The notes beneath the pieces are model-generated. The model was not told the DNA's origin and ran no database searches. It was given only the letters and a program-made list of their open reading frames with translations. Below, piece after piece: positions 3,478-61,400 of a stretch of DNA of 64,000 nt (position 1 is its first letter; each line of letters begins with the position of its first letter). The position numbers and the translations under genes were made by a program. Source of the DNA: Diadema antillarum (Eukaryota). Where the stretch lies: positions 7,068,001 to 7,132,000 of the forward strand of contig NW_027271017.1 in assembly GCF_040938485.1 (NCBI RefSeq), given 5' to 3'.

Positions 3478-6400
3478 CTGCAACCGAGAGAGCCAGTCGA
3501 TAGATATGATTATAAAATGGTTATGGATCCTAATCAAATGATTGGATGAGAGCAATCACGTGAGCAGTCTTTAATTTTACCCAACATGCCCAGCAGGCAT
3601 TAGTCTCTACCACTGACTGCCATCTAATGCCTGCTACTAATGACCCCTCAGAGAAACGAGTGTATATGACTGTGACTTGCTGTGTAATCTCATTTAGTGA
3701 CATCACAGTTGCATACTTTAGCAATGCGCACTCAGTCAGTTAAAGGGCATGCACTCAGTCACCTATTTTAATTACCATGAACAAATTTTCGTGTTCAGTG
3801 CCATTAGCAGTGTGTTTGGAGCACTTCTTCGTACATCTTGGGTTTTTCAAATGTAAATTCTATACATAACTGACTGGTATTTACCCATAAAATAAGGTAA
3901 GTGAAAAATAGGTCACAAAACCATTTTATAATACATATAATGCACAGGTTTAAGTTTGCGAAGTTAGTGGAGATGCAGCGCACTCTCGAGTATTCACAAT
4001 GTTGTGCAACATGCACTCGGCTGCTCTTGTGCATGTTACACCATTGTAAATACCCTCAAGTATGCTGCATTTCCACTAGTGCCCTCTCACCTGTGCACTA
4101 TTTGTATATTAGGACTACTATGAGGTGTGGGAACATTTGGTATAGTCCAACCTCAGTTATCAGGCAATGTTGGGACTGGGGGACAACCCGTTAGGTAGTA
4201 TTGTTGGATTAGCAAGACATGGTCAAGCACAATACTTTTATGCAAGTTGTTTTGGGTATAAATCAGGCATTCTTAATTCACTTTTCATTATGCTAACTGA
4301 AATGATGTTTGCAAGTTTCATTATTCAAATAATGTGGAAATAACATGGCATAAGAGTGGAAATACAGCATCCTCTTAGTCCGTTACCTTTTAGCAACAGT
4401 ACTTTGGTTGGTATAGACATACACACTGCACATCATATCGTAGTGATTGACACATATGTCCTGATTTCATTGTATTGGCAAGAGAATTGTTACGTTGTAC
4501 TTTAAGTGAAGTTTCACACTGATTAATTGCTAAGAGATTCATATACCAGTCCATGTATGGATAATAGAGAGATCCCGTACAGTGATGACCAGTAACCCAG
4601 GTCAAGACTGTGTATTATCCCCCAACGCTGGACAGACCTAGCATGAAAACCATCTTTTACAACTGACTAGATACTCAAAAGCACTCCTTGTTTCTACTTT
4701 GAGGTTGTTGCTACAATGAATCTAATTTGCCATTGAGTGGAAAAGCAAAGAGAATCATTCAACTGCTCTAATATCTCTGTCCTAATCATTGTCACAATGA
4801 ATATGATGACAAATTACATTCACTCTGTAAAATTTGAATGGGTTGATGCTTGACTAGATAAGGTGTGGGCTGAACATTTAGAGATTTCAAACTTCTCAGA
4901 TATCTTTGAAATTCCTTACTTCATATAGGTTAAGAGCACACCTTTCTCACTTCAAGGGCAAACTTGTTGAAAATACTCACACTCTCTCTTGATGGGAGGC
5001 ATTCAAGGTCGTTGGACATTTCATCTGCAAAATCCGCTGAGATGAGGAGCTATAATATAAATACAAAAGAAATGTTTATTTAATATCATTTCAGCTTACG
5101 TACGCAGCGAGTCCAACTCACAAAGAGATGTTAAAAAATGTTGATATTCCAATAGTGGTCAAAAGAAAATGCTAACATATGGCAGGGGCGGATCCAGGAA
5201 TGCTGTAAAGGGAAGGCGCCTTCACAAAATTAAAGGGGGGCGCACCCCCCCCCCATTTTTTTCCTTTTAAATTCTTTTGTTTTAACAAAAAATAAAGAGG
5301 GCGATGCGCCCCCCTCTGGATCTGCCACTGTATGGCATGAAATCAGAACGCCTTACATGTTTTTTAGCTTTGTGACAAACAAAACGAGAGATAAACAGAC
5401 ACTAATCCTCTACACAGGTCACATGTACCATTGTTGGTATATTTTGACATATACACCCTAAACATATGCTGTGTGTTTGTTATATGTCCATGCAATCACA
5501 AATGTTTGTCGATCAGAACGTCTCAGCTGACAGTTATCTGATTACAAACATAATAGGGGGGAGGTATTACAACTTGACTATAACTATTTGCCTTCTCCCA
5601 ACCATTTGATTAACATCCATGGCTCTCCTGGATACTGTTCACTGAGGTAATCTTCCTGAGTTACACAGGTGTCATAATCTTCTTTACTTTGCAGGCTTGG
5701 TATAGAGCCACGATTCACTGTCACCACATTGTCAGGAAACTGTGTAAAATTATTAATAATCAATAAATGATAAATTAAGTGTCAAGACCGACTTGAAAGT
5801 CAGTCCTAACAAGTTCATGAACTTGCACCAAAATTCAAGAAGACATTCTCTTTAGTTTATCATCTGTTTGGAGTAAAACAGTGAACAGCAAAGCTTTACA
5901 AATATTGTTGCATGTAAATGACTTTGCAGTCTTATCTCGTTCAATCCGTTATTTTTCATGAATATTCATCATCTTAATAATTTCACTGATTTTCTAGTTT
6001 AAGTGATGGTAATCATTGTCTAGAGTGGTTGGTTAGGGGGTGAATGTTTGTTAAGGTCCAGGAGTATTTGTTTTTAATCAATGTTGCATAAACCATGCTG
6101 TTGAACAGTATCATCACACAGATGACTGAAGGATGGATAAAGAATGGTACACAAGATTAAGAAAATAAATAAAAAAATCCACTCCATGTTTACCGGCTAC
6201 AAATCAAATTTGGAGAGAAGAGTCAAACGGAAAAATTACAAGAAAAATGGTTAGAGAAGCAATGACCAATATCAATGTGAAATATAATCATATGAAACTT
6301 TACTATTCCACAACTTCCTTGTGTTACTTTAAATTTGCTAATTTTTTCACTCTTTCATTCGTTTGATTTCACATTATGAAGTTGACATGGCGATGAATCT

Positions 6401-9400
6401 AAGTTCTTGTGAATGCTAATGTGTTACAAATCAATAAGTGTGAAAGCTGCATGACAAGGCTGTGCAGAGAATGACATGTCTTACCTGGAGCCAGGGACCC
6501 CTGGCCACAAAGGGATGGTTCTCCTCCACGAAGGAGCCCTCTACGCTGGGGGACACCAGCGTGATTGCACAGTCGTTGGCCACGTTCTTGAAGGTGAAGT
6601 GGCGGCCATGTTTGATGCGGCCCCTGTATGTGTAAAAGGCACACAACCAGAAAAATAGAAATGAGGAAGTAACAAAAAAGAACCAGCATATGTGAAGCAT
6701 ACACAGTTAAATAACCCCACGCTGTCCATAAGATAATGATTATCATGCCTCGACACCTCAGAACGTTCACTCCTGCACATACAACATCTCTCTTCATTGC
6801 AGTTGTTACCCTGAGACCTAGGTCGCTTTTGAGCACTTTCAAGAGAACCAAACCGTACCGAACTGAACCGTACTGAGCCAGATTGGGAGTTTTGAGTACC
6901 CTGTGGAGAAAGCAAACCTCGTGAGTTGTGTTTGGACTTGAGTCGGAGGAGTGGCAAGTTTTATAGCAATAGGGTCACGCACCTGCCGCACCTGTGCTAC
7001 ATACACGTGTCCTGAACAAAGAGAATCAACTCTTTGCGTTATGATGTAGTGCGTGCTACATGCATTCTTCTCATGCCAACTTCTGGTACGGTGTGTACAC
7101 TTTAGGACCACTTTGTGTACTAGCACTCTGAAGCACCGTACAGTATGGAATGCTTTTGGAGCACAATGGAAATAGGTCCGCTTTTGGCACAGTACGATAC
7201 ATTACGGTACACTTTAAGAGTGCTTGAGATCTCCTCTGGCAAAGGATATGGTATGGTATGGCACTCCTCAGTATAGCACTACAAAGCACCCACAGGGTGC
7301 ATTTGAGTGCTCTCCTAAAGTAAACTGTACCAAACCGTACCCATGCCAGAGGAGCGCTCGAACACTACTAAAGTGTGCCATAACGAACTGAACCAAGCCA
7401 AAAGTGGACCACTTCCTGATGTGCTCCAAAAGAGTACCAAAAGCGCACCAAAAGTTTGCATGTGAGAATGCATGTATTATGCACATACGGTATAATGCAA
7501 AGACTTCATTCTCTTTGTTCGGGACAACTGTAAGTAGTTAAAGCGCGCCAGGTGAATGACCCTTTTGCTACAAAATGTGTGACCCCCTCTAAAAATAACT
7601 CATGAGGTACACTTTCAAAACAGACCGTTCAAACGCTCCAAATCTGGCACAGTTCGGTATGGTATGCTTTGGTTCAGTTTGCTTTGGTTTGCCTTAGAGC
7701 GCTCGAATGCACCCCTAGATTACAATAGTTATACATGCATGCTTCCTGGATTGAAAAAAAAAAAAAATCCATACTACAAAGCATCAATGATCATAGCCAT
7801 GGAAGAGACTGACTCACTCAAAGTTTGTTGGAGACAATCACAAACACACCACATGCATAGACATACATACAAAAAGATGATATATCGACATGACACTATG
7901 CAATACATCAAGATAATGATGGTCATTGAATGGCTACTGAAGGGTCACTGAAGGGTCACTAAAGGATCACTGAATAGTCACTCAAAGGTCAGCACACAAA
8001 CCTGAGAGCCAGGGCAAGCAGTGTGGCAGCTTCCAGGTTCAGTCTCATGCTGACCCCTTCCAGGTAGCGCGAGTTGCCGAGCTCAAAGATAGAGCTGCGG
8101 GTGTCAGCGTCGCTCTCCAGTGAGGGCTTCCGGTTCAGACCGCGCCCCTCTGCCTCCTCCTTGCCCTCCCCTTCCTCCCCGGGACGACCCGAGATGGGCG
8201 GTAGGACCGGTCTGTCATTGGACAGGCCTCGGGTGAGAGCCTGGCGGATCTGCTCGGTTTCTACAAGATGAAGTAGAGATGGAAATGATGACTTCTTAGA
8301 AGTCTCCTCCTCAGTGAAGCATGTTGAATATCAAAGATATCACACAGCATATATGATATATGCATTACAAAATGAATGCTGAAATAACTTCTTGCTCTGT
8401 TCAATGTGCTTTACAATCTACAATTATTGTGGAAGAAGACAGAAAATATCAAATACCATCCATATCTATTTTTAGAAATTGCAAGCTTCTGGAAAGATAT
8501 GAAGTTTAAGAGCAATAACCTGTTGAGGATGAGTCTTGAGTATACTCCATTCGATACACCATTCATGCCTGTAATGAGACTAACCTAGCTGTGATATCCT
8601 TGGGGTGTCCCCCTCATTAGTCCAGTCCCCGACCGGCTCCCAAGAGCACCTAGCGCTGACACCGCTGAGATTGGAGCCCTCCGTCTCGATGCCGTGCTCG
8701 ACTTCATCCATGAGATGGGGGTTGACCTCGAAGATGGTCTCGCCCCGCCTCATGTCTGTCACCAGCCACTCCCCTCCAGCTCTGTCAATCAACAAAGGGG
8801 GCGGGGCAAAAACTGAACATGGCGACCTCACAATAACATGGAAATCAAGCAATTTCATATCATAGTACAAACTGAGTATATGTGGCTCATTTGTGGATGT
8901 AAAGAAAGCAGCACAATGAACCAGTTGAATACTGTAAATATATGCCATATATCTAGCAAGTCTAATTTTTTCATAATACAGACATCCCGACAATTTCGCA
9001 AGTGGTTATATTTGTGATCGTGGAGTACAAAAATGAACAGAGAAATATGCCCCTGCACGTCGCATTCATGTCAAGATCAGAGTAAATGATTTTGGGTGTT
9101 GTTAAATTCGCGAATAGCACTGGACTCCCAAAATTCATGACAATAAAACCTTGAGATATGTATGGCGTATACAGTATTGAATATAGAATATTGTCTACAG
9201 CATGGAATTTACACTACACTCACACTTCCATAGACTTGAGGAGTTCCAGCATGCCTGGACCATTCCACCTCTGAGATGCCTGGAGTTCTTCTGTACACAC
9301 TCCAACAATCTGTACGAGATAGATATTTAAAGACAAAAATCTGTGAGAGATAGATATTCAAAGACAACAATCTGTGAGAGATAGATATTCAAAGGCAACA

Positions 9401-12400
9401 ATCTGTGAGAGATAGATATTCAAAGACAACAATCTGTGAGAGATAGATATTCAAAGACAACAATCTGTGAGAGATATTCAAAGACAACTATCTGTGAGGG
9501 ATAGATATTCAAAGACAACAATCTGTGAGATACGGATATTCAAAGACAACAATCTGTGAGAGATATTCAAAGACAACAATCTGTGAGAGATATTCAAAGA
9601 CAACAATCTGTGAGAGATAGATATTCAACGACAACAATCTGTGAGAGGTAAGATATTCAAAGACAAAAATAATCAACAGATATTGCTGCATCTAAAGCTA
9701 ACACAAGAAAGCAGTCATATCCCTCACATTTTGGTGTTGTTTTATACATACCCCACATAGTCATAGTGTGCATGGCATCTTCAATGCACATAGCAACATG
9801 TGGGTAGATAAGATTCAGCAACAGTTTAAACCATGCTACCTTACTGTTGGACAGTAACAAGAAATCATGTTTATCAATCTTTAATACACAACAAGAACAA
9901 AGTACTATTTAAATGCATTTTGTAGCTTCAAATCAATGTGAAAGGAAGACATCTTAGAATTTCATGCCACTGTTTTGATCAAAGCAGAAATCACACATTG
10001 TGACATGTATTCACAGAGGATTGGCCTTTCATTTCTACACCTGGCCCATACTTTTAACTTTCCTTTCAAAAATGCACCAGACAGTTTGAAGCTTTCTCAA
10101 TGCTTTGTAATGTTTAGTAAATTCTGTTTTAACCAACTCATGAAGGCAAGCATTCTTTTACTTGACATGATGAAGACCCCTGAGACTGCTTCCTGTTTTT
10201 GTTTTGCTTGCTTTCTTTACAGCTGACGGGTATGACATCATGCCTGACTACCTGTATGAAATTGACGATGCCATGGGGCGTGTTGATTGCCATGAGCTGC
10301 CGGTCGTCTGCCATCAGCATGTGCTGTATGCGAGACTCGCTGTTGTCCAGGGGACTGTGCCAAGACACGTGGTCTCCATTACAAAGAGTGTTTCCTGCAG
10401 GGAGCAGAATTAGAGCAGACATGCCATCAACAAGTACCATTTATAAATGCTTGATTCTTATTGATTGAAAGCATGTAAAGTCTGAGGTGCACTCATTGCC
10501 ATTCATGTGACATCCCACTAGATTCAGTCGAGAAAAGTCCTTTCTCCATTACAAACAATAGCAGACTATGCATTTGGTAGAATTCTGCCACAGATAATAG
10601 TAATGCCCTGGCAAAAACATTTAGCACTCACTACTACAGTTCTAAGGTCTTTTATGCCATGAGTGCATGGGTTATCCTTAGGTTGTGACAGCATGAATAT
10701 CTAAAATCCCTGAAAAATAAACATAAAATGAAAAACAAAAAACAAAACAAAACAAAACAGGATAATATTCAAGGTAGCCATACCAGGGGCAACCTGTTAA
10801 TCTGGACCCTGTTGCATACAAAGATGCAATCAAACATACATCAGAACATCAAACTCAAAATCAAAATCAAAGTGAGACTGTATTAGCTAATCAGAATTGA
10901 GCATTCAAAGACATTCATATGTTTAATTTTCTGATTTATGGATATTAAGTTTTATCTCAACCTTTATGCAACAGAGCCCTGGTAGTACAAAACATGTGGC
11001 ACACACAAACACTTGTTTTAAGACTACATTGCAAATTCATCACTTCTATCAATGTATCACAGGGAATATGCCTTTGAATCAAAATTAAAGTTCTAGCAAA
11101 ACATTTCAAATTTCTTCTCAACAAAAACAGAAATATTTGATTTATTCATAGAATCAGCCCTCTAAAGCATCTTTTTTTAAATATCTAATCTGCCCCCCTC
11201 AACCTGTTGAAGACAAGTCCCGAGAATGCTTGGGCAGGTGTCTATGGGAAATGCGTGTTATAGCAAAATCAGTCCGTCCTCAATGGGTTAAAAAATAAAA
11301 TACATAATATAAAGTAGATAGAGAGGCAGATACAGTGGATTAATAGGTACATACAATGGAGCTAGTGAGGGGGAAGTGAAAAAGAGGAGGATAAAGAAAA
11401 GAGAGATCAACAGATAGATAAACAGAAAGCAATTTAGTGAGGGAGAGAGAAAAAAGTGGGGGGAGGGGCGGGAAGAGAACACCATTGTGGAGAAAGAAGA
11501 GAATGCCCTGTCTTTGGTCTGCTTTGATAATACAGTCTGAATAGATCTCTCTATATAGCCTCCACTGAGGCATACAGGTGGACCAATGGGATCCTTGTCA
11601 ACTTTTGTCACTGATTGGTTGATAGCCTCTTGAGATGATAGCCACCTTGGTAACTGATTCTTTCCTCATTGACAAGAGTATAACGACAAGACCGCTACTC
11701 TTGCTTCCTCCCTCATACACGCACCACAGTGATTGCATGGGAGTACATATTGTACATGAATGTAACACCACATGCTGCCGCAACACATGATATTAGGTAC
11801 TTATACGAACATGGGCATCTTACAGAATCACAAACAGTGTCTCTAAATGGTTTCATTGACATGGCCGATTTATATTCCAATATCCACAGCATTCCCTGGG
11901 CAAGAAGACTTCCTTTCCAATACAAATAATGCACTGTATTCCTAAATATACACAGCAGTTTTAATACCTGGACCCCATTTCATACAAAGTTGCTACGAAA
12001 GCAACTGTTGCTGAAATGGCAGGTGTCATGGTAACAGCAAGAACCCTGCTTCCTGATTGGTTGTTGCTACAAGAAGTTGTTATTCGAGCAAGAGGTGATA
12101 TCCTAACATCTTTCATAAAATTAGATCCTGGCGTGAGCAAAGACAGGACTACTTGTAATACTGTCCCCCCAACCCCATCATTTTATTTTTGATGTCACCA
12201 AACTGTTTATCAACCCTCATAGTGTTTAATACCCTCATTGAGGGATCCACTATTTCTGATCAACCATTCCATTGTGATGGACATTTTGCCAGTGTTAACC
12301 GTAAGTCAGTCATGTTGCGAACTCTTGTATGCATCTTGTATGCACTAGATTCAAACTCAGCTGCAATATCAAGTTTATAAAAGTAGGCAATGATGCCACT

Positions 12401-15400
12401 TGGATTTGTATGTGAAAATCTGAGTACTCCATGAAATGAAATGGAATATTATCATAATTATGTGTGACACTATTATCACATCAGTCTTAACAACCAAAAC
12501 AACATATTTTGTAGCTAGAAAAGCTGGATGAGAAATAAAGTCAAGTATGTATGGCATATAACAACTAATCTGTAAGAAAATCCAAATCTATGGCAAAAAC
12601 ATTAAAATGTGCTTCCTACTGACTTCAGTGGCATTCGCAAATATTGTCTGATGTGAATGACTGCCTCACCTGACTGGAAGACATATCTGGCTAGTCCCTG
12701 CATAAGCTCTGCTGGCCAGGTAGGGGGCGCCGTCTCAGTCGGTTCTTTCTTCAGTCGGAAGGTCAGCTCGAAACCGAAGCCACTTGGGCCATTGGGTCCT
12801 GATGGAATCCTATAAAGAAACAGATAAGCAGAACTTACGAATGTGTGTCACCTATCAATTCTCTTCTTCTCTCTTTCTTCCTCCACTTCTTCCTCATCCT
12901 CCTCATCTTCTGTGCAGAACTTCTTTTGAGTATACTTGTTCAATTCAAAGTATAATACCTTTTCATGTTCAAGCTGGCTTTGCCATACGTAAACAGAAAG
13001 ATCAAAGGTTTAAGTTTTCTTGAAGCATGCTTGGGTTTTCATACACTGTGTAGTGATGGGGACAACTGCTTTCTTCCTGGAAAGTTCTCATTATGTCTCT
13101 CATAGTCCTGGATGGTTCCAGAGTAACCAGCTTGAATACTTCATTGTCCAAGCAGAAGCATGGAGCATGATTCACAAACTTGAGAAACTTTTACACAAGA
13201 CATACGCATGGGAACACTGCCAACACATTACCAGAACATTATAAAGGGCGAGAGAGAGAAAAAATGGCAGACACGCTCTGTCACCCCGAAAGATTGTGGG
13301 ATTCATCCTTGACAAGGATGGCGTACCATGGGGACCAAAATATTTCTGGCAACATGCTCACCTGGTTTTGTCCCACCATAAGCCGCCAAAGGTGCACGCA
13401 ACCTTTACAGAATGGGGGACAATGTGGGACATGGCTGTAGCATTTAATCATCTGGAAAATCAACAATGGGGAGGTTGGGAGTAACGCTACATGCGTATCC
13501 ACTCCTCTCTCGTAACAGGAAATCATTTTCTCTTTCAAGTCAACAAGAGTGTTTACTTATTCTCTCTCATCTTTCACCCCCACTTGCTTCTTATTGTCAT
13601 TCGACCCTTTGATGTACAGATAATGCGCATTGTTGCTCTGTCACATGGAAGTACGGATGGAAGAAGTGCTAAAGAAATTGCTCCGCTTCGCTCGGAATCC
13701 CTGCACACGCTCAAAACATTTCATCTCGAGATCACACTAAAGAAAAGCACTCATGTGCCATGTCTAAGCAATCACAATCAAGAAATTAATGAGACTTCAT
13801 TGAGTGATGAGCCACATATTTTGGCTAATCGTGAAATTATAAGGTCTATTACACTACATTACCACATAATTCTCATTCTTCATCACTTTTTCCCAGGCTC
13901 TCACAAAGACACCAGCTACCAAACATCACAGACGCATGATTTACAGTTGCCCTGATAGGAGGGCGAAAAACTTGATGAGTATTTTCTTCTTCTTTTTGCA
14001 GAAAGACTAATGAGGCAGAACAATGCCAGAAGCTTACAGGATGTTTGCTTCTATATGCCATGTTTGCATACCCGTGGGAACTTACTTTAACGGCATGTGA
14101 CTTGGCGCGACTGCATTCCCAAAATAAAGGCCAGTTTAACTAAATGTTCTCAAATTGCTTTTGTTATCTTCTCCCAAAGGGTCTGTTTCTCAGGGATGAT
14201 ATACATTTGAACAGTATTTGAAGTCAAGTCTGCATGCATTTCAATAGCTGTTGCTATGTTTAGGTAGTCAACAGACAAAATTTTTGGTTGCCAAGGGTGC
14301 AACCTTTTTGTTAAAAAGGACATGTACAGACTTCACTTCACGTATCTACCTCTCCAGCCACTCCTCTGGACAATCTCTGATCAACTCAGCCTCAAACGAA
14401 CTCGGCTGATGAATTAGCAATGTTCAATTTGCAGTTAGTGCAGTTGTTCAAATGACCTAAAATCTTAAATTGTCAAAACAGAACAACTGCAAAACTAAAT
14501 ATATATCACTCATATTAATATGTAAACCAACTTGCTTTTATATTTAATAACAAGCTCCCTTGGATGTTCAGAATGTTCTTTCACTGCAACATAAAGAAAC
14601 TATATGTGTTGCATGTGACATACAATTGTTGCAACATCGCTCATAACGATTATGTGTCTCTTCATGTTGTTTTTCTCATATGACTTCTGTCTACTCATGT
14701 GAAGAATGTAACTTTGAAAATTGTGTTGGTGCATTTGTATGAAATCTTTGATTACATTGTATCACACATTTTGGGCATCCATGCAAATCTTACTGAAGCT
14801 TGAATGACAGAAATCTCAGATTTTGTTGCTGTTGTTGTTGTTTTACTTGGGGGGGGGGGGGAGGGGAGAACAGACTAAGCTAAATTAAAGCCAGTAAACA
14901 TCATTTTGTGAGACTGGTTTTAAAATCCCAATGTCTGTGGCAGGGATTTAGCTTTCAACAAAGGAAGAGATTACAAAATGTTTGTTTGAATCCTAGATAC
15001 ATGTACATGACATGTCCAGTTCAACCTCACTTATCTGGCCATCATTTTTCTAGATCTCTCTTTTATCAGGACATGGACTTGTCAACAAACAAACAAATAC
15101 ATTGTGTATTCAAGCACTTTTCATGCAAAATCTTACTGGGACCAAACACAAAGTAATAATCTCATTGCAAATACTAGGCAATAAGAAAAAATGCCAATTG
15201 ATATGATAGGATGTACCTGCTGTCATGCTGATTACTCCTCTGATTGTCTTATCAGGTACCCAGAGAAATGGGAGAAAAACCTTCAAGGTTTGATAGCTTT
15301 GCTTGTCAGCAAATTTACAGAAAATAAGACAATAAAGAAGGGATATCTTCGCTCATATTTGATTTTATGTCCACATCATGTGAATCACAAAGCATGCAAA

Positions 15401-18400
15401 TATCATGCACATAGTCATGGGAATGATAGATTGACGATGGGTTCCAAACCCTTACCTGCTAGAAAGGTAAGCATTGGAACATGTACCATATGAATTAAAA
15501 TGCTCATCCAGCCATATCACTTTAATCCAGATGACTGGTAAAAATTAACTGTTTCTAGACTATACACTTGTACTTCAACACCCGGTGCTTTGGATCCTTT
15601 TTCTGAGTAATAATCTGAACAATTATGGTTACATAAAATTTCTTTGTTGAAACCTTGTCATTACTGGTGGCAACCTGTTTATAGCATCAATCAAAGATGG
15701 AGGTTGGTCCCAGAGAGATTAATCGGGCAACATTCATGAGTCACAAAAGGCAGCTGAATGCAACCGCGGTGAGAATACCTCCTGTGCTGAAGCACAAATA
15801 AACATGTTTATCATTAGTTGGAGTTAAGGAACAGAAATCCACATTATATTCATATTTTTTCAAAATTGTTTTGCAATGAGAGATCCACATTCCTGAAGAA
15901 TCCCTCCACCCCCACTTGTAACAAAGGCAAAGGTATGTGCACACTGTGTACACATAGAAAATGACAATAGTCTCTGTTAATCTATATTGATATGTCAACC
16001 TTCTTTTATAGCCAAGGCTAGATTTGAAATATAGTCCTAGATTGATTGGTGATAGGCACCTGTCAAATAGAAAGAATAGACACGACCAACTTTACCAAAC
16101 AAATGGACCACTGATGGTATCAAAGTGAGAACAGCAGTCCATGTTTGCAACAAAGCCGTGGTGAAATAATCAATGGTGATTGCATTGCATTTAAACATGT
16201 TTGTCGATAATAAGTTGGGAAAGAACTTTTCTCACATTGAGACTGAAAAACAAGAATCCCCGGAATAATAACATCGCCATAAAAATAGTCACCCCCTGCC
16301 TGGGCTTCCAGAGAAAAGCTTGGTATGTGGTGTTACAATAAAAGATCCATATCATAATTAGATCTTGTTTACCATGACTGCAAATATGAATTCATGAAAT
16401 GACAAGAGAGGCTGAACAACCCTATTTTGAATCCACCCTACCTTTTTAACAACACCCTTTAAAGTGTAGAAGAGACTGAAAAACAGGCTTTACAGATTCT
16501 GTACAATAATTAAGGGGCCCTCTCATGCAAATATTTTTAATAATACCATGATCCTTTGGCTGGAAATATCCTCGTCTGACTTCCTTGTTGCTGTGTAAAT
16601 CAATTTCCCATGCTCTCTTTGCCGCAAGGGAACAGATTTATGAAGGAAAACTCATACCATCAAAATTTTCATTTTTAAAGGACTTTGCAGAAAAGGCAAA
16701 ATGGCTCAGGTACATACATTGCAAGCACTTACTGCAGAAAGACTACCACACTTACACTGAGCAAAATAATGGTACCTACATCTGGAATTCTAACTCTCAG
16801 CCATACAAAGATCGTATACAACTGTGTACTGATCAAGATCTTGGTATTGCTGTCATTCATGTGACATACAGTTTTTCAGAAAATGTGACTTCATTACCTT
16901 GTATGTTTTTTCCCTAAAATTGATAGATTCAAACTGTTGAATTGAGATACTGTACAATAGTGTACCATGCCAAACCCTAGATCCCCACCCCCCATACCAC
17001 ACACTTTGATTTGGCCAAGATTTCACAATAAAGTGACTTTAGATAGGTATACCCGTTGAAAACTAGTCATGAGTATACTCGGGCAGGTGTCTCTGGGAAA
17101 TGTGTGTTATAGCAAATCAGTTTGTCCTATTAAAACAGGTTAAGGAATCTGACCAAAGTCAGAAAGTTCCATTGCAGATATTGACTTTTAGAATTCAGCC
17201 CAGAGTAGTTTAGTACAAAATTATTGCTGACCTGGGGCCCGTTTCATAAAACTTGTCATCAATCAGTGACAAGTTGTCATAGATGTGACAAGCTACTGAA
17301 ATCCTTGCATCTGATTAGCTGAGAGCAAATTTGTCATAGAAATGTCGCAATTGTTACTGATGACAAGTTTTATGAAACGGGCCCCTGGACTCTTATGATA
17401 TCTCGGCGTTCAAGGGCTATCAAAACATTATGCACTAACTCTTAAAGGGTGTTTTCTTTAAGTTAAGATTTTATCAAATTGATTGAAACATGCATCCCGA
17501 GTCAGACAACACAAGTCAGTTCAAAATAAACATCTTGTATATGGGTTGGCACGACATGTATGCTACATGTATCATGTATTTAATTGAATGGCTAAAAGAT
17601 GGAGTCTATTGCTCAGTCCGTGGTTGAGTCTGGGCACTTACAAATGTAGCTCGAGCCTGTAGTTTACCTTGCAATCTGTCACGATCATTTATATGCAATA
17701 TGTTATCACATTGCCATGGGTGATGATAGTCACATCATATCAATCTTATCAAAGGACTCTGGAGACTGTACATGTAGTGTTACCAGACATGTGAAATTAA
17801 AATCCCCTTTCATGTGCAAATGTCAAGTCAACATCCTTTTTTGACATGTGTCATCTATCATACTACTGCAATGGCCGATAAAAGCATCTTGGGAATACAG
17901 TCTACACGTACCTCTAGTGCATGGAAGTGAAAAGTGTCATATTATCATTGAAAACTCCAAACAGTTTTAGTTTCGAGAGGAAAACTGACTCTAGATGGTT
18001 TGGTATAAGCTCACAGTGTGTCATTCCACAGTCAACTGGCATTGGGATATCTCACTTCTTTCATATTAACTAGGTGGTTGAGCAAACGACTGCTTCAACC
18101 TATAGCTAAGAAAATACTTCATTATTCATCAAATAAACACTGAAATAGTGACTCCCAAAGCCAGAGCTCATAATTTACAACATAAATCATATAATGCCCT
18201 CAAAGGGCTTTGATAGAAGTAGCAAAAGAACTGTCTATTCAGAACCAAAGAGTGTCTCAATGCGAACTTTTTCAGCAAAGAAACGTTCACAAAAGCTGCA
18301 TGCAAACGGATGCTGATTAATGACTGCTGCTTCTGCCCTGTCATTTCAAGCAAGAGAGCAATTCTATTTATGATATCAAATTGGAAATCTGCCCTTTTGA

Positions 18401-19584
18401 AATAAGTTCTCTTCATGACTTATGATTAAAAAAAATACAGACAAATGGTATCAAGCTATTTTAATCGGCTCACCCAAGGTCTTCGTCTTTAGAGTTTGAC
18501 ATCATAGTATACTTTTTGTGATGTGACACTGTGATGGGTAGCAATGAGTCGGTTTTAAAAATGAAAGCATGTGGTTTTTTTTTCTTTGTGAGATTGGTTG
18601 AGATGGCAAACATGCGACCATGAAAATGTCTTTGTTTCTGGATATGTGCTGCATTCTGTGTGCTGGCAATTATTGAACCCCATCCCCCCCCCCCTTCCTT
18701 GATAGTGACAAAGAAAGAACATGACCCAGAACCATTCCATAGTCTGCTGCCATATATCATCAAAATGCTCTGCAAACAGAAAATGCAGAGACAGTTGACA
18801 AAAGCCTTGCCCCATGACAACTGAAGTCTTTGACCAGCTAATTTTAGCAGGGTTGTATTCTTAGTGACTCACACATGGGGGACAAAAGTTTGTATCACAT
18901 AATACGATGTCAACCCAGATTCCCAGCAATACCATGCTTTACACCATCGGTTAAAAAAAAAATGTGTCTGCTACCTACATTGAAAACCAATGCTTAGTCA
19001 GTTACTACTGCACAGAGCATAAAATTCAGAGTTCAGCCTCATTTCCTGATCCTTGATAATCACAAGATTTTACACCTGACCCACACTTTTATAAATAACT
19101 GCCCTGTCTTTCAGGATTACTTCTCTGATCCTGCTGTCATAACCTGGAACAGTTCAATGATTACAGCACACTGAAAATCTTTAGTGCTGAAAATGAAACT
19201 ACGGTGTACTGATCGTCTTCATTTGGAAGATCATCTTCATTGTCATACGGTGAACCTAAAGCTTTCCTGTTATTGCAATGTTAAGCAAGCAGCAGAGTCT
19301 TCATGCAGAGCTCTCTGCTTCAGCAAAACATGTTGTCTTTGCAGTTTGAATCTGATAATTTGATATCAACACTCTGTTTATGTAGGACATTGTATGTGTC
19401 AGCATGTCCTGCAGAAGAGAGACCAGTAATGCATTCATTTCGTCTCAGTCTCGACAAAAATATCTTGGCTATCTTCTGTTCCAAGTGGGGTGATGACAGA
19501 TAAGACTCAATACTTGCACCGTATGCACAAGCAGACAATATATCATACAATGTTTTCTACAGAACCCATGATGCCACACACATG

Positions 19585-19660
<76 letters not shown>

Positions 19661-22600
19661 GACACATACACACGAGACACTGATACATGTATGTCAGTAG
19701 ACAGACATGTCAACTGTGTGGGAACATGATATACATCTGGCGTGACATTTCCAGCCATAGTAATTGTTTCTGCATTCTCCAATTTCCAAACACGCCTGAG
19801 AGCATTTCCTCCCCCCCCCCCCCCACTGTCTCCTGTCCCTGTTTTTCTCCCATTCTTAATCAATAGGTGATGCCGCTGTGTGCCAACCAAGACACCATCA
19901 TTGTCCACTTACTCATGAACTCGGCCATCTCCGAACAGGTCAGACAGTCCGAAGCTGATGTAATGCCAGTGTGGAGGAATGCCATGTCCAGGTTCACCGG
20001 GGTTGCTGTACATACTGATGAAGTCCAATGGGTCAGGGCCATGTAACCTTCCAAAATGAGGTATGAAGAAAAATTGAATAAACAATCAAAGATACATCAA
20101 AGAAAAAGAAATAGGAATCATTACCAGAGGAATGAGCCAAGCACAGAGTTAAACTAGAAAGGCCAGACAATCAAGTATTTATCTATTTAAGATACCTACC
20201 TGGTATGCAGTGTGCACATTTTCATTTTACAAACACATGTACAAATGTACATGTAAATAGCATTCTAGCACCACAGTTTTCAAGAACAGAGAATTGATAT
20301 TGGCATGCTGATAAAGGCAGCTTGATGCTAAATCAACTAAAACCAAACAGAAACCCAACACAATTAGCTGTACAGGAATCTACCAAGAAAAGTGAGTGTA
20401 AGCTACTGTATCTGTAGCTCAGATAAATCAAATAGAATTTATCACAATAATAATGCACCATCTCTAAGAAAAGAAAAAAAGAAAAGGGAAAGGAGAAAGG
20501 AAATAAAAGAAAGAAAAGAAAAGAAAGGAAAAGAATGCTGCATAGTAGAGGAACTGGTAAGTCTAAAGAGAATCCCATTCACAAATTTATGTCAAGTTGA
20601 CATCACAAAAAAAAAAAAAAATGTAGTTGTGATACGTAGCTTTGATCTTAAATTTGGCATAGTTGGTGTATTTTTTAATAATGCAAAATCATTTCACAGT
20701 CGATTATGATCTAAACATATTTGATTCTGTCCATCCAGTTCTAATTGCAAATTAAACATTGTGTAGTACTGTTGTACACTTTAAAATTGTATTCATTTAA
20801 AGCAGACACTGAGCTGTGCATATTAAATTTCATGGCTCTCTTAATTCTCACTGCTGTTTTGTCAACAAAATACACCTTAGAAATTAAATACATATTGAGC
20901 CACATTTAAGGCAGAAAAAAAAATGCATCACGGTTTGATATTCAGCACTTACAGGTATCTAATGACAACACTATATGTCTTCCATAAACCATGAATTCAC
21001 TGATTGTACATTGTATGTGCTAGATAGGCAAGACTGCTACATGGTTGATTACATATTACATGGGCCAATAGCCAAAGAATCATTGTTCCTTTAGATGAAA
21101 AGCAAATCTGAACATCTAACAAGCATCTCTGAGCATTCTGAAAGGGATTCATGCCATATTGCCACACCCCTGACACATGTACACGTACATTGTATGCACC
21201 TGGGAATTAAAGCTGATCTTTAGTCAAGTTTCCCTCACTGATTCCTTCGAGTACACCAAAACCTTTTATCGTCAAAACTACAGGCAAAAGGACTTTTTTT
21301 TTCTGTAAAGCTTGATAGGTTTATATTTCTCTTGTCATATTTCAGTATAAAGACACAATAACACATGCAAAGGAAGTGCAATTGAGTGGCACTCCACTGT
21401 GTGTGGTAAAGACTGAATAGTGGATTAACAAACTATAACTTTAGGGGGGGGGGGAAGAAAGGGAATGGGAGAGGTAAAGTGGGAATCAGTTCTGGGTTCC
21501 TAGCCAAGCTGTGTAAATGTAGGCCTATTCTGAATCACATTGCATGACCAACTGTCATAATGCACCAACTGTGGCATTGATGATTGATTGAACAACTAGA
21601 TATTCATCTACGAATGACAGTTGACCAGCTTCAAAGGAGAGTATTCAACCTATACAGTATATGTATTCGGCTGATGTTACCTTGCATGATATGAATCATC
21701 ACAAGAATTCCAAACACCTTGATATTCATGTGACCTTCTAACTTTATATTACATACACTGTACTGATATCATGTAAAAGAATTAAAAAAAAAATGTATCA
21801 AGAATGACTACTAGGCTACAGCTACAAGACTATTTCACAGTCAAATATGAATCATCACAGAATCTTCTTTAACAGGAATAAATCTCTGATGTCAAGCTCT
21901 GTTGTTGTTACATTTGGTATTTTTTAGGCCACGTAAAAAAAAGAAGAAAAAAAAAGGACATTGTAGTTGCTTGTCTGGATTTATGGAGTGAGGTGATATG
22001 GGAGGTCTGTGTGTGTGTGTGTGTGTGGGGGGGGGGGGGGTGTTGCCCCCCTCCAACATTTTTGGCTGTCAAAAGAAAAAAAAACATTAAAAAAAAAATC
22101 ACAACATCCATGAATTTCCAAAGGTTCCATCCTTAGATTCTTCTCATCTAAGCGGGGGTGGGGGATACTTTTGACCTTGACCCACCACCCTCACAATACA
22201 TTCTCCGGCCCCTGATATTATTATTCTGATCTGAAGCCGCTGCATACATGTGTCATTGCAAGTTGGCGATATTCACTGGCATAGTTTAGCACCACCTCGT
22301 ATAATCATTTTCAGGCATGCACAAACTAACCCTAAACATTTCATAACCTAAAATACTTGCATCTGAGTCTCCACAGTCAAGTTAAAGTTGAATATTTGTC
22401 ATTACTTTTGACACTTGTACAAATTTTGGAATGACTTTACTGCTGTGTACACTGTATGTATCATACCTGTACTGACGGCTTCGACTTTGCAGACTCAGAT
22501 GCAAGTGTGTTTGGCTTCGAAATATTTGGGGTGAGTTTACACATGATTGAAAATCATTAATGAGGCGGTGCGAAACCACACTATAGCGGGCACAAGTAAA

Positions 22601-54720: not shown

Positions 54721-55434
54721 AACGAAGTGAGCGACGTCCACGCATTGTTTTGAGACCAGGAAGGGAAAATAGGAGGAAAATTATAGAGTAAAAGAACCAG
54801 AAATCCTTACAGAATTATAACGCTAAGACTTGTTTAAACGTCATAAGAGAGCTACATGGTATTATGATATCAGTTCAGAGATAACATCTACTGTAAAACA
54901 CTATATTTTCGCGGCAGGTTATGGAAAGTACGTGCAGTGATTCGTTGTAAATCGCTTGTCGTAGATGACGCTCTTTATATTTCATGATTGTCACTAGTTG
55001 ACCATTCTCGAAAGAGACTTTGTTCGACATTCGGGTACTTTGTACTAGGTATAGTACAGGTACTTCCAACCGATCTAATTCATCTGCGCGACCCGTGCAT
55101 AGGTAGCTGTGTTAACATTCAGGTGAATCGCAGTATGTTAGTTGATCTGAACTTTAATTGAATAAGACAACAACATATGTAGTAAGATAACATTAGAACG
55201 GTGCAACTGGTATGATCAGTATTATTGTACATCAAACACAAGAAGGAGAGATCTAGGAATCTGAACTAAAGGTTTACAGAAAAATAAGATGATTCTGTAG
55301 ACCACTTAAATTTTATTTGGATTGCAGTTACTGCATAGTGGTTTATATCCATTTGTCAAAATAAGAATAAAATTAATGACAATACAAGGTAATGCCATAA
55401 TCACTTATCAAGTTAGATTTTGTGTGATATATAT

Positions 55435-55921
55435 GAACAGTTTGTTCGCAAAAACGATAAATCCATATTTGCCAAATGGAGATATTTGCGATTAAAGGGA
55501 AAAAAATAAAGAGAATAATAAGAAAATTTTTGCTTCTTTTGACCATAACTTTAAAAATGTACCTTTATATGAAGAGTTTGTTCGCAAAAACCGATAAGTC
55601 CATATTTGCCAAATGGAGATATTTGCGATTAAAGGTCAAGAAAAATAGAGAGAATAATGAGAAAATTTTTGTTTCTTTTGACCATAACTTCAAAAATGTA
55701 CCTTTATATTTAGTGACCAATATATCATTTAAAAGGTATTATTTTGTACTTTATGACAGAGACCGTACTTCAAAATCTTCAAAAATGGACTTTTCGGTTT
55801 TTGCGAACAAACTCTTCATATGTAGTGACCAATATATCATTTAAAAGGTATTATTTTGTGCTTTGTGACAGAGACCGTACTTCAAAATCTTCAAAAATGG
55901 ACTTATCAGTTTTTTTTTTTT
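55435..55921 (+). mobile_element. Sola1-like MITE (outer copy) interrupted by a copy of itself
   Basis: ATAT|GAACAGTTTG...; the sequence resumes after the nested copy at 55571-55817; right end decayed. Confidence 0.75.
55571..55817 (+). mobile_element. 247-bp Sola1-like MITE (nested copy)
   Basis: 33-bp TIR GAAGAGTTTGTTCGCAAAAACCGATAAGTCCAT (32/33); TSD ATAT. Confidence 0.88.
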
Positions 55922-58474: not shown

Positions 58475-61400
58475 GTAAGTGGCATTTTAGAACCGAAACA
58501 ACCCGAGCCAATCGACAAAAGTAATTGGTGATGGCTGTCAAAACATTAGGAGCTGTCAAATTTGGTTTATCTAAAGTGTTTCTTTGTTTCAGCATAAAGG
58601 TTGTAGAACTCCATTTAGAACAGGAATAAGTTACTGTAACACCGTAAAAGCCAGCTTTAGGATACTGTTACAGTCTTTCTGCTAGAATTTCAAAATTTTG
58701 TCATAGACATGGTAGTACAAAATGCAGCAAGAAAGCACATCCACAGACTGCAGTCTTTTGGTCTAGAGAGTAGACCTATTGACAAATAAACAAAAATGCA
58801 TTTTAACTATTGATTTTTAGTGATATTTATTTGAAACTAGAGAGCCAATTTTAGTAAGCAGTCTTCTATGCTGCCAGACTTTTGGGTTTTTTGTGATGAA
58901 GTATTTACGAGATGATTTTAAATTACTATGTGTGCAGAATGAATTATATTCAACAATTGTCAGCAATTGAAGGGTGGCAATCTGCTGACACTAGTGCATT
59001 GCCAATGACCAAAACATAGGAGGCAACCTCAAAATGGGAATGAAAATTTAAAAACTTTTGATTATAAATATGCTTTAGATCGAAGTACTAAAGCAGTATC
59101 AATGATTATATGATCCCGATAAAAATCATGAGAGTTGCCTAAAACTGATGATCGAGGAGTAATTTATTGGGAATTTGATTTAGAGTCTTGTAGAAAGTTA
59201 TAATGAAGTGCTGATGGTACATAATTTCACAAACAAAAAAAAAGAAAGATGTACCGGTATTTGTTTTGGTAGTGTGGCGGAGGTTATGATTGTATTATTT
59301 GTGACTAATATTTGTTTCCCTTATTTTTTAGATTTATTTTCAGACAGGGCAAAACTGCTTGGATCATCCCGTTTTGCTGACGCTCGTCACACTACAGACT
59401 TCTGAAATTGATTTATTTTGTACAGCAGGTGTACAGATGGGCAGTTTTTGTCTGCGTTCCACTCTTCAATTTTGGGCTGTGCATGGAGGCAGACACAGAG
59501 TGCAGAAACTACATGTATCATATCTATAGGCATCTTGGGTCGTAGTATCCAAGTCACACAGTTTCATATGTCATCTTCCAACAGTTGCACACTATAGACT
59601 TCCAAATACAGCTGCCACTAATGAGTAATGTTTCTTTCTTATGTTTAGCATATTGTGCAGTTTGTATTTGTTTTTGTTTCTTTGGTGTAACAATGCTTAA
59701 AACAATCCTTCAAGTATTTTGTGAGAATTTCCATTTTTTTATATTCTTTTTTTTTTTCACCTGACATTAGACAAGATATTAGAAGGAGACCAGTGTCTGG
59801 TAAGATTTCTCACCCTCAGGAAAAAAAACAAACCAAAAAACAATTAGTTCAGCTCTAGTGATGTGTCATATTACCAGAAGGAAGGCAGTACAAAACATGT
59901 AAAATACTTGATTTCTGTCAAAAATATTTAAAGGAACCCTTCTGTTTGTAATTATTTGGGAGCCCATTTTCAGCTTCTTCTTAAAAAAAAAAAAAATGGT
60001 CAAATTTGTCACCAAATGTGGCATGCATACACAAAGGCACCTTGCTAGTCCCAGATGGTCTAAGAATCTCTTTAAAAAAACAAAAAGCAAAACAAAACAA
60101 AAGCTTCTATAAAAGCAGAAGTGATAGAGCTAAAATGCTATTGGTACAGTTACTGTATGTTCGTTTGTGACTGCATTTTCAAGTTTGTTTATGTCCGGTC
60201 CAATTGTGCCCCTGTTTTTAGCTTGGGGGGGGGGGGGGGGGGGGGGGGGGATGGGGGGTGGGGGGTGGGGGGGGTCAACTTTCCCATTTCATCTTCTTGA
60301 AACTACATAGTCAAATTTGTCAATAAACTTGGCAGGCATTATCACTATGGTGATAGAAATGATATACACAAATGGATACCATGTCCCCCATGGGGGGGGG
60401 GGGGGTCAACTTTCCCATTTCATCTTCTTGAAACTACATAGTCAAATTTGTCAATAAACTTGGCAGGCATTATCACTATGGTGATAGAAATGATATACAC
60501 AAATGGATACCATGTCCCCCATCTCACCCCCCCCCCCCCCCCCTACCCAAAAAAAAAAAAAAAAGAAGAAAAAAAAGAGAGCTCTGAGTAAATTTATGAG
60601 ATAGTATACTTTCATTTTATTTATTTATTTTATTTTTTTTTTTATTATTCATGCAGGATCCAGGGATGGCTTCTTCGGACTGGTACCTAATTTGGGCCAA
60701 TTGTTTCATTTTGATCTTTTTTAAAGTGCATGGTCAAATTTTCTGTGACATGATATACAAGTAGACACCATGCCCCATGGAGGTCCCCAAAGGCCCCATC
60801 CCCAGTTTACAATATTCTTCTTAAATGGTAATAGTCTGCAAGAATGCATGAAAGGCAAACTTGCGATACTTGGGTAAGCGCTAGGCCCCTGGGTCTCTTG
60901 TTTGAAGTTGCATTATATTTGGGAACTCTTTGCAGTTTAAACTTCAAAGTAGCCATATACCAGGAATGTTTTAGCATATTCTCTGATTATGAAACCAGTC
61001 CTGTAGACTTATTCCTGTATATACATGGACATGTAGCAATGGGGTACAATTTTTTTATGACCAGAGTGTTGTATGTTTTTATGTCTACTCAAGTGATTCC
61101 CTTCTACTACAGTAACTCAAAATATTTAATACCATTGGTAGACTGCAACAATAGTGATACTCAGTCAGTTCATCAATGCACATATTGAGTTGTTTTCCTA
61201 TTCTTCACCACCAGGGTATGTCCACTGGGGATACCAGATGCAGCTAGTCTCGGTTCCAGGCTGAACAAAGAATTTGGAGTGTCGGTCACAGACACAGTCA
61301 TCCTCCCAAAGGAAGACCCAGGAATGGGGGATCCAGCAACTAAGGTGGAGAATTCCGCGCTGAGTTTTCGTCAGTCGTACTTCCAGAATATGCCCCTGCC

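What the first reader, a model, noticed from the sequence alone, without database searches (positions are those of the whole stretch)
9303..9669. Minisatellite made of a SUFU splice acceptor: 11 decoy 3' splice sites stacked upstream of exon 5
Seen: on the gene strand the true junction reads aatatctatctcgtacag|ATTGTTGG, and the repeat unit reads aatatctatctctcacag|ATTGTTGT. The amplified unit is the acceptor plus the first 7 exon bases. Decoy AGs lie 31, 62, 93, 124, 155, 182, 213, 244, 271, 298 and 329 nt upstream. Only 93 and 213 keep frame, and both run into TGA within the 31-bp units, so any decoy use gives a frameshift or premature stop. Inference: the spliceosome must select the most downstream of 12 near-identical acceptors, so copy number could act as a heritable, NMD-coupled tuner of SUFU dosage and Hedgehog output.
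Basis: partly seen in the sequence, partly recalled or inferred. Interest (0 to 1): 0.72.

Follow-up and report, generated by a model that had tools for sequence, protein, structure and literature searches.

The report
Splice-acceptor minisatellite ("mirage") in urchin SUFU
The last 24 bases of an intron plus the first 7 bases of the next exon of the sea-urchin SUFU gene have been copied about a dozen times in tandem, leaving 11 look-alike splice acceptors; this is real and differs in length between the two assembled copies of the locus, but it is a kind of junction-spanning minisatellite already described in amphioxus and human genes, and nothing here shows that it regulates SUFU.

Summary
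Observation confirmed in every detail. A 31-bp x 12.2 tandem array lies at window 9303-9670 on the minus (gene) strand. It abuts SUFU exon 5. Each unit repeats the 3' splice site plus the first 7 exon bases. Decoy AGs lie 31 to 329 nt upstream, and each one leads to a premature stop.

The array is not an assembly artefact. A second, collinear copy of the locus (contig C1544, most simply the other haplotype) carries 10 units. It lacks two 27-bp units, and one decoy AG reads GG. So array length differs between the two copies.

The unit occurs nowhere else in the genome. SUFU is single-copy.

The kind is known. Minisatellites that duplicate exon-intron boundaries are called "mirages" in amphioxus (Adh3, TnC, globins, PGBD5). 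Donor-side versions are known in human F7, IFI6, CBS, LMNB2 and PDGF. A single acceptor-junction duplication is known in human CBS (844ins68). In most of these the authentic site is used.

This scan had already noted two other such arrays in this same genome (JKAMP, an SDR gene).

The "NMD-coupled Hedgehog tuner" reading could not be tested, because no RNA run was listed. Nothing in the sequence calls for it.

The most likely reading is a neutral or mildly costly by-product of slippage or unequal exchange. It is a new member of a known kind.

The parts
9310..9670 (-). Intronic part of the 31-bp (some 27-bp) minisatellite: 12 units in this copy. They carry 11 decoy CAG|ATTGTTG acceptors, and the last unit forms the true acceptor.
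   Evidence: TRF; AG list; unit alignment
9303..9309 (-). First 7 bases of exon 5 (ATTGTTG, codons for I-V-G). This is the exonic part of the repeated unit and the source of the unit's first 7 bases.
   Evidence: IVG is conserved in 7 spliced SUFU fragments of other species
9224..9309 (-). SUFU exon 5 (86 nt, IVGVCTEELQASQRWNGPGMLELLKSME..). It is identical in both assembled copies.
   Evidence: Pfam SUFU positions 130-159
9310..10251 (-). SUFU intron 4 (942 nt, phase 0, GTAGTC...ACAG).
   Evidence: a phase-0 intron sits at the same place in 21 of 29 fragments from other species
10252..10394 (-). SUFU exon 4 (ends ...GIVNFIQ). Three third-codon-position SNPs (10258, 10261, 10288) tag the two alleles.
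   Evidence: Pfam SUFU positions 78-136
9343..9347 (-). CTCAC of the last decoy unit, with its A at 9344, which is -35 from the true acceptor. It is the only yUnAy branch-point-like motif in the 60 nt upstream of the true acceptor. Its role as branch site is inferred, not shown.
9286..9291 (-). GAAGAA purine-rich motif 18 nt inside exon 5, absent from the decoy 'exons'. It is a candidate exonic enhancer that would favour the nearest acceptor. This is an inference from the sequence only.
   Evidence: Sequence; no functional test
8585..8781 (-). SUFU exon 6 (197 nt). It holds the premature TGA (8706) that is reached if the +31 decoy is used.
   Evidence: Pfam SUFU_C

Best explanation
This is a 'mirage'-type minisatellite. 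A 31-bp segment spanning the intron 4/exon 5 junction of SUFU (24 intron bases plus 7 exon bases) was duplicated in tandem. It then expanded by replication slippage or unequal exchange to 10-12 units.

It is most likely a selectively neutral or mildly costly structural polymorphism, not a regulatory device.

Productive splicing uses the most downstream acceptor because only that one is followed by the real exon. The real exon has a purine-rich GAAGAA 18 nt in and its 5' splice site 86 nt away, which suits exon definition.

Each unit's CTCAC lies 31-35 nt upstream of the next AG and only 2 nt before its own AG. Whichever unit's branch site is engaged therefore fixes the next AG as the acceptor. 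The true acceptor most likely uses the branch site supplied by the last decoy unit.

Any use of a decoy gives a premature stop and would probably be removed by nonsense-mediated decay.

Shown here: the anatomy, the uniqueness of the unit, the length difference between the two copies, the frames and stops, and the age of the intron position. Inferred: the origin mechanism, the branch-site chain, the basis of site choice and the fate of mis-spliced RNA.
For: Array and junction identity.

SUFU exons and the conserved FIQ|IVGVC junction. A phase-0 intron sits at the same place in 21 of 29 fragments from other species, so the junction is old and the array is derived from it.

The unit is found nowhere else in the 1.75-Gb assembly except on the collinear contig C1544. 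The other hits there are unrelated 14-bp simple repeats.

C1544 is collinear with the window at 88-99.8% identity, and its SUFU exon is identical at the protein level. It carries 10 units against 12 here, differing by a 54-bp indel of two 27-bp units plus 2 substitutions. One of those substitutions destroys a decoy AG.

The decoys are as good as or slightly better than the true site: 10-12 of 16 pyrimidines against 10 of 16. Each has a CTCAC at -31/-35.

All decoys lead to stops.

There is no RNA structure or inverted partner that could mask or single out sites.

Published precedents. Amphioxus mirages differ in length between haplotypes and do not disturb regular splicing (PMC3087553; PMC3902484). 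Human donor-side minisatellites in F7, LMNB2 and PDGF use only the authentic site, and monomer number does not change the choice (PMC1557585). CBS 844ins68, a duplicated acceptor junction, still gives normal mRNA (PMC7277093).
Against: There are no transcript data for this locus: none was listed. 'Decoys silent or rare' therefore rests on analogy.

By sequence alone the decoys are not weaker than the true site, and they are transcribed first, so appreciable mis-splicing cannot be excluded.

In human IFI6 and CBS IVS13 the two pseudo-sites nearest the authentic one are used constitutively (PMC1557585). CBS 844ins68 is reported to lower transcript yield (PMC7277093).

Only 1 of 19 decoy AGs in the two copies is lost. 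That fits neutrality, but the sample is too small to rule out selection in either direction.
Confidence: 0.7

Rival explanations
1. A fraction of transcripts is spliced to decoy acceptors and destroyed by NMD, so array length lowers productive SUFU mRNA in a copy-number-dependent way. This would be a passive dosage effect, and possibly a selected 'tuner' of Hedgehog signalling.
For: The decoys are equal to or better than the true site in pyrimidine content. Each has a branch-like CTCAC at the right distance. All give premature stops far upstream of the last junction. The array RNA is unusually unstructured, so the sites are accessible (z +3.2). The two copies differ in array length. CBS 844ins68 is reported to reduce transcript yield (PMC7277093). 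IFI6 and CBS IVS13 use the pseudo-sites nearest the authentic one (PMC1557585).
Against: There are no RNA data. Amphioxus mirages and F7, LMNB2 and PDGF show authentic-site use only, and in F7 monomer number had no effect. There is no sign that selection maintains the decoy AGs. NMD rules in echinoids are assumed from other animals. An adaptive 'tuner' needs far more than leakage.
Confidence: 0.2
2. The array helps the true acceptor or otherwise acts in cis. It could be a reiterated pyrimidine-tract and branch-site platform that concentrates U2AF/U2 (an intronic splicing enhancer). It could bind PTB-type repressors through UCUU and CUCUC motifs. As DNA it could be a cluster of GATA sites (AGATAG once per 31-bp unit on the + strand).
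For: The true acceptor has the weakest pyrimidine tract of the SUFU acceptors examined (10 of 16). Its only yUnAy motif within 60 nt comes from the last repeat unit. Every unit holds UCUU, CUCUC and, in the 31-bp form, AGATAG.
Against: These are all short motifs, expected often by chance in a 31-bp unit. The 27-bp units lack the GATA motif. Losing two units is tolerated on the other copy. No binding or expression data exist. In F7, deleting or adding monomers showed no regulatory element.
Confidence: 0.07
3. Assembly artefact: the array or its copy number is a collapse or expansion error.
For: Tandem repeats are error-prone in assemblies. One amphioxus mirage was mis-assembled in a draft genome (PMC3087553).
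Against: The same array, with the same order of diagnostic variant units, is present on two independently assembled contigs. There are no N in the window. The array is only 367 bp, well within a single long read.
Confidence: 0.03

Closest known systems
[quoted passage not shown] 2002, as cited in Ebner et al. 2010, PMC3087553; Pavelitz et al. 2013, PMC3902484)
   Same: A tandem array whose units contain the splice signal plus a few exon bases. BflGb6 duplicates the 3' end of an intron plus the 5' part of the exon, exactly as here. Adh3 units are 10-72 bp, a range that covers 31 bp. Unit number differs between haplotypes (6 against 3 in BflGb6; 12 against 10 here). Units are 81-100% identical.
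   Different: A different phylum (echinoderm, not cephalochordate) and a different gene. Here the exonic part is only 7 nt. Regular splicing was checked by RT-PCR in amphioxus but could not be checked here. Somatic instability is reported for Adh3 and is untested here.
Human F7 IVS7 37-bp VNTR and the similar donor-side minisatellites of IFI6 (6-16), CBS IVS13, LMNB2 and PDGF (Borensztajn et al. 2006, PMC1557585)
   Same: The first or last monomer spans an exon-intron boundary, so identical pseudo-splice sites are stacked next to the authentic one. Copy number is polymorphic. The site adjoining the real exon is used.
   Different: Those arrays reiterate the 5' splice site downstream of the exon. 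This one reiterates the 3' splice site, with pyrimidine tract and branch-like motif, upstream of the exon. The 5'-to-3' scanning explanation given for F7 does not carry over directly to acceptors.
Human CBS 844ins68: a 68-bp exact duplication of the intron 7/exon 8 boundary (reviewed in PMC7277093)
   Same: It duplicates an acceptor junction. The insert can be spliced out to give normal mRNA. It is a common, tolerated polymorphism.
   Different: It is a single duplication, not a 10-12-unit array. A reduced transcript yield is reported there and is unknown here.
Regulated unproductive splicing (AS-NMD, poison exons) and NAGNAG tandem acceptors
   Same: Alternative acceptor use would introduce premature stops. 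The acceptors are closely spaced.
   Different: Poison exons are typically conserved and regulated by a factor, which is not the case for this array. NAGNAG acceptors are 3 nt apart and keep the frame, whereas these are 27-31 nt apart and mostly shift the frame.

Membership tests
Mirage / junction-spanning minisatellite | Head-to-tail tandem array of several similar units | tested here: met
   TRF: period 31, 12.2 copies, 89% matches; 10.2 copies on C1544
Mirage / junction-spanning minisatellite | A terminal unit spans an authentic exon-intron boundary, so it contains exon bases | tested here: met
   The array runs to 9303, 7 nt into exon 5. The junction FIQ|IVGVC matches spliced SUFU of 7 other species. 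A phase-0 intron sits at the same place in 21 of 29 fragments.
Mirage / junction-spanning minisatellite | The repeated units carry copies of the splice signal | tested here: met
   11 of 11 decoy units keep CAG in the window. 8 of 9 keep it on C1544, where one reads CGG.
Mirage / junction-spanning minisatellite | Length instability or polymorphism between alleles | tested here: met
   12 against 10 units, a 54-bp indel of two 27-bp units, between the window and collinear contig C1544. That C1544 is the other haplotype is inferred from collinearity and the 88-99.8% identity mosaic.
Mirage / junction-spanning minisatellite | Regular splicing is not disturbed (authentic site used) | not testable with these tools
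   The look-up of sequencing runs listed no run, so read laying was unusable
   No RNA run listed
   All 12 alternative AGs give stops in the extension, in exon 5 or in exon 6. Several SUFU exons lie further downstream.
   Only two copies from one assembly could be compared. One decoy AG is lost and two units are missing on one of them. No other species could be reached.
NAGNAG / short tandem acceptors | Acceptor AGs 3 nt apart (or a few nt), usually frame-preserving | tested here: not met
   The spacing is 27 or 31 nt, and 9 of the 11 decoys shift the frame

The most novel reading that the evidence does not exclude
Array length sets the fraction of SUFU pre-mRNA lost to decoy acceptors and NMD. 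Under this reading the 10-unit and 12-unit alleles give measurably different SUFU dosage, a standing, heritable quantitative modifier of Hedgehog signalling in a sea urchin. Junction-spanning minisatellites, of which this scan has now noted three in this genome, would then be a general source of expression variation in highly polymorphic marine invertebrates.
Probability: 0.1. Interest if true: 0.6.

Novelty: new member of a known kind. Interest (0 to 1): 0.3.

Why it matters
The array is a clean natural experiment in 3' splice-site choice. Twelve acceptors are nearly identical from -24 to +7, each with its own pyrimidine tract and branch-like motif, and only the last one is productive.

Donor-side arrays such as F7 have been dissected experimentally. 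Acceptor-side arrays have hardly been studied.

The two assembled copies differ both in array length and at exonic SNPs. A single heterozygous animal could therefore show whether copy number changes mRNA yield.

With the two other cases noted by this scan in the same genome, the finding suggests that 'mirages' are not confined to amphioxus. They also occur in an echinoderm with similarly high heterozygosity.

It does not by itself say anything new about SUFU or Hedgehog signalling.

Tried and rejected

2. Close relatives. The search for homologous proteins with the exon 4 ORF gave 29 SUFU fragments, none above 72% identity. No echinoid transcript or genomic fragment was reached. I did not search with a joined (spliced) SUFU model; exons were searched one by one by reference.

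3. A dispersed repeat or transposon origin is rejected. The unit is found only at this locus and on its second copy. The 70% hits on C67 and C1112 are unrelated 14-bp TAGATAGTGAGAGA arrays.

4. A paralogue instead of a haplotype is judged unlikely. The second contig is collinear with the window. Identity varies from 88 to 99.8% along it. The SUFU_C exon is 100% identical at the protein level. Only two SUFU matches exist in the assembly.

5. Structural masking of decoys is rejected. The array RNA folds worse than its shuffles (z +3.2), and there is no inverted partner within 8500-10500.

6. Intron position in an insect. Homalodisca has exons 4 and 5 fused, so it says nothing about the acceptor. 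Read-through fragments of other species gave the answer instead.

7. The original mirage paper (PMC117041) is not held. It is cited only through PMC3087553.

8. I built no weight-matrix splice-site score, because too few verified acceptors were available. Pyrimidine counts and yUnAy positions were used instead.
Full report
**What is there.**

On the minus strand, window 9303-9670 holds a tandem array of period 31, with 12.2 copies, 89% matches and TRF score 552. It is the only multi-copy minisatellite with score >=100 in the 64-kb window. The window contains no N.

Read on the gene strand, eleven units end in ...ctctcacag followed by ATTGTTGTCT. The twelfth ends in ...ctcgtacag followed by ATTGTTGGAG, which is the start of a coding exon. 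One extra AG at +178 sits in an 'atag' variant unit. Three units are 27 bp and the rest 31 bp.

**The gene.**

Stop-free pieces of the minus strand hit Pfam SUFU (PF05076) and SUFU_C (PF12470) exon by exon, in profile order: positions 1-31, 34-84, 78-136 and 130-159, then SUFU_C.

- Exon 4 ends ...GIVNFIQ.
- Intron 4 runs 10251-9310 (GTAGTC...ACAG, 942 nt, phase 0).
- Exon 5 is 9309-9224 (86 nt).
- Exon 6 is 8781-8585.

Seven spliced SUFU fragments from other species read ...F[IV]Q|[IV]VG[IV]... without any insertion. The acceptor at 9310/9309 is therefore the productive one.

In 21 of 29 database fragments the match stops right after F[IL]Q and continues with V. That is what a read-through into a phase-0 GT intron gives. 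The intron position is thus old and widespread, although one insect has exons 4 and 5 fused. From memory, and not tested here, human SUFU exon 5 is also 86 nt.

It follows that the junction came first and the array was copied from it. The unit is 24 intron bases plus the 7 exon bases that encode I-V-G.

I searched exons one at a time by reference. The joined coding sequence was not built for any search.

**Consequences of decoy use.**

Frames were followed from the phase-0 end of exon 4. Only +93 and +213 keep frame, and both meet TGA after 42 nt. All other decoys meet TGA or TAA inside the extension, except +31. That one runs through exon 5 out of frame and stops at TGA 8706 in exon 6. All these stops lie several exons before the end of the gene, so they would be canonical NMD substrates. 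That last point is inferred from other animals, not shown for urchins.

**Are the decoys competent?**

From -24 to +7 the decoys differ from the true site at three or four positions. They have 10-12 pyrimidines in -20..-5, against 10 for the true site and 11-13 for five other SUFU acceptors in the window.

The only yUnAy motif in a unit is CTCAC. Its A lies 2 nt before that unit's own AG and 31-35 nt before the next AG. The only such motif in the 60 nt upstream of the true acceptor is the CTCAC of the last decoy unit, with its A at 9344 (-35).

By the accepted rule, the first AG at a workable distance downstream of the branch point is used (scanning for 3' sites; see the discussion in PMC1557585). 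Engaging the branch motif of unit k would therefore select AG k+1. The authentic site would depend on the last decoy unit for its branch point. This chain is inference.

No structure hides any site. The array RNA folds worse than its shuffles (z +3.2), and no inverted copy lies within 8500-10500.

What sets the last site apart is what follows it. The real exon has a GAAGAA motif at 9291-9286 and its 5' splice site 86 nt away.

**Is it real, unique and variable?**

A search of the window's own 1.75-Gb assembly finds the unit in only one other place, contig C1544 (153 kb). The weaker hits are unrelated 14-bp arrays.

C1544 is collinear with the window over at least 15 kb. Identity runs 99.8%, about 94%, 88% and 98.4% along the stretch. 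It carries the only other SUFU_C exon in the assembly, 100% identical at the protein level. This mosaic is what two haplotypes of a very polymorphic species look like.

Earlier notes of this scan say the assembly is of Diadema antillarum with both parental copies retained. I confirmed the second copy for this locus only and did not verify the species.

C1544 has 10 units. Unit by unit the order of diagnostic variants is the same: the first 'ttacc' unit, the 'gtcg' unit, the 'ccc' unit, the 'atag' unit, the 'gcc' unit and the last 'cgtac' unit.

- Two identical 27-bp units are absent from C1544.
- One decoy AG reads GG.
- One CTCTCAC reads CTTTCAC.

Substitution divergence is about 1% around the array (8550-9900). 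It is much higher a few hundred bases away. Exon 5 is identical in the two copies. Exon 4 differs at three third-codon positions.

So the array is not an assembly artefact, it differs in length between the two copies, and both alleles look like working genes.

**What is known.**

A full-text search led to two bodies of work.

[quoted passage not shown] They were first described at Adh3 (units 10-72 bp, somatically unstable). They were then found in TnC, in globins and in PGBD5. In BflGb6 the 3' end of an intron plus the 5' part of exon 2 is repeated, 6 units against 3 in the two haplotypes. RT-PCR showed regular splicing, although many units keep AG/GT (PMC3087553; PMC3902484).

The second concerns human genes whose minisatellite begins on an exon-intron boundary and so reiterates the donor: F7 IVS7 (37 bp, 5-9 copies), IFI6, CBS IVS13, LMNB2 and PDGF. 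In F7, LMNB2 and PDGF only the authentic site is used. In IFI6 and CBS the two nearest pseudo-sites are used as well. In F7 minigenes, 1 to 12 monomers gave the same site choice (PMC1557585).

The CBS 844ins68 allele is an exact duplication of an acceptor junction. It is spliced out to give normal mRNA, reportedly with a lower yield (PMC7277093).

No paper in the held library describes such arrays in sea urchins.

After I had reached this reading, the scan's own notes showed two more cases in the same genome. One is a 223-bp x 4 acceptor array in JKAMP. The other is a donor array of about 40 copies in an SDR gene. Both were filed by their follow-up agents as mirages. I did not re-examine them.

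**Verdict.**

The structure is a new member of a known kind, an acceptor-side mirage in an echinoderm SUFU gene.

The proposal that it tunes SUFU dosage through NMD is neither supported nor excluded. No RNA run was listed. The precedents lean towards silent or nearly silent decoys, with CBS 844ins68 and IFI6 as reminders that leakage or reduced yield can occur.

My estimates are:

- about 0.7 that it is a neutral or mildly costly by-product;
- about 0.2 that there is a measurable, copy-number-dependent loss of productive mRNA, with an adaptive role much less likely;
- the small remainder for a cis-acting helper role or an artefact.

The sharpest test is allele-specific expression in a 12/10 heterozygote, using the exon 4 and exon 6 SNPs found here.

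Noticed in passing
window 4934-19916 against G000:C1544 (L011, L002, L013): Divergence between the two assembled copies is very uneven. It is 0-0.2% at 4934-8100, about 14% substitutions at 8400-8549, about 1% around the array (8550-9900), 8-17% at 10050-11250, about 12% at 10771-12935, and 1.6% at 12933-19916. This looks like a mosaic of old and young haplotype blocks inside one gene.
   Followed up: partly
window 10258, 10261, 10288 (exon 4); 8592, 8745 (exon 6): Exonic differences between the two copies. The three in exon 4 fall on third codon positions. They are useful tags for allele-specific expression.
   Followed up: partly
window 9310-9670, + strand: Each 31-bp unit carries AGATAG (a WGATAR GATA-factor consensus) on the + strand; the 27-bp units lack it. 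On the RNA strand each unit carries UCUU and CUCUC pyrimidine motifs. These may be chance features of a short unit.
   Followed up: no
window 19575-19673: A (CA)n microsatellite of about 50 repeats lies in SUFU intron 2, some 240 nt downstream of exon 2 on the gene strand.
   Followed up: no
window 55430-55914 and 60259-60522: Three two-copy tandem duplications with periods 139, 112 and 131 bp at 93-99% identity. I did not examine them.
   Followed up: no
L014 (Homalodisca vitripennis, GCA_019364655.1) 8186-8419: In this insect the SUFU segments that match urchin exons 4 and 5 are one continuous exon, so the intron that carries the array in the urchin is absent there.
   Followed up: yes
G000:C67:203495-204286 and G000:C1112:476617-476776 (L003, L005): Long arrays (26-66 copies) of a 14-bp unit TAGATAGTGAGAGA. 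They resemble part of the SUFU unit only through low-complexity similarity.
   Followed up: partly
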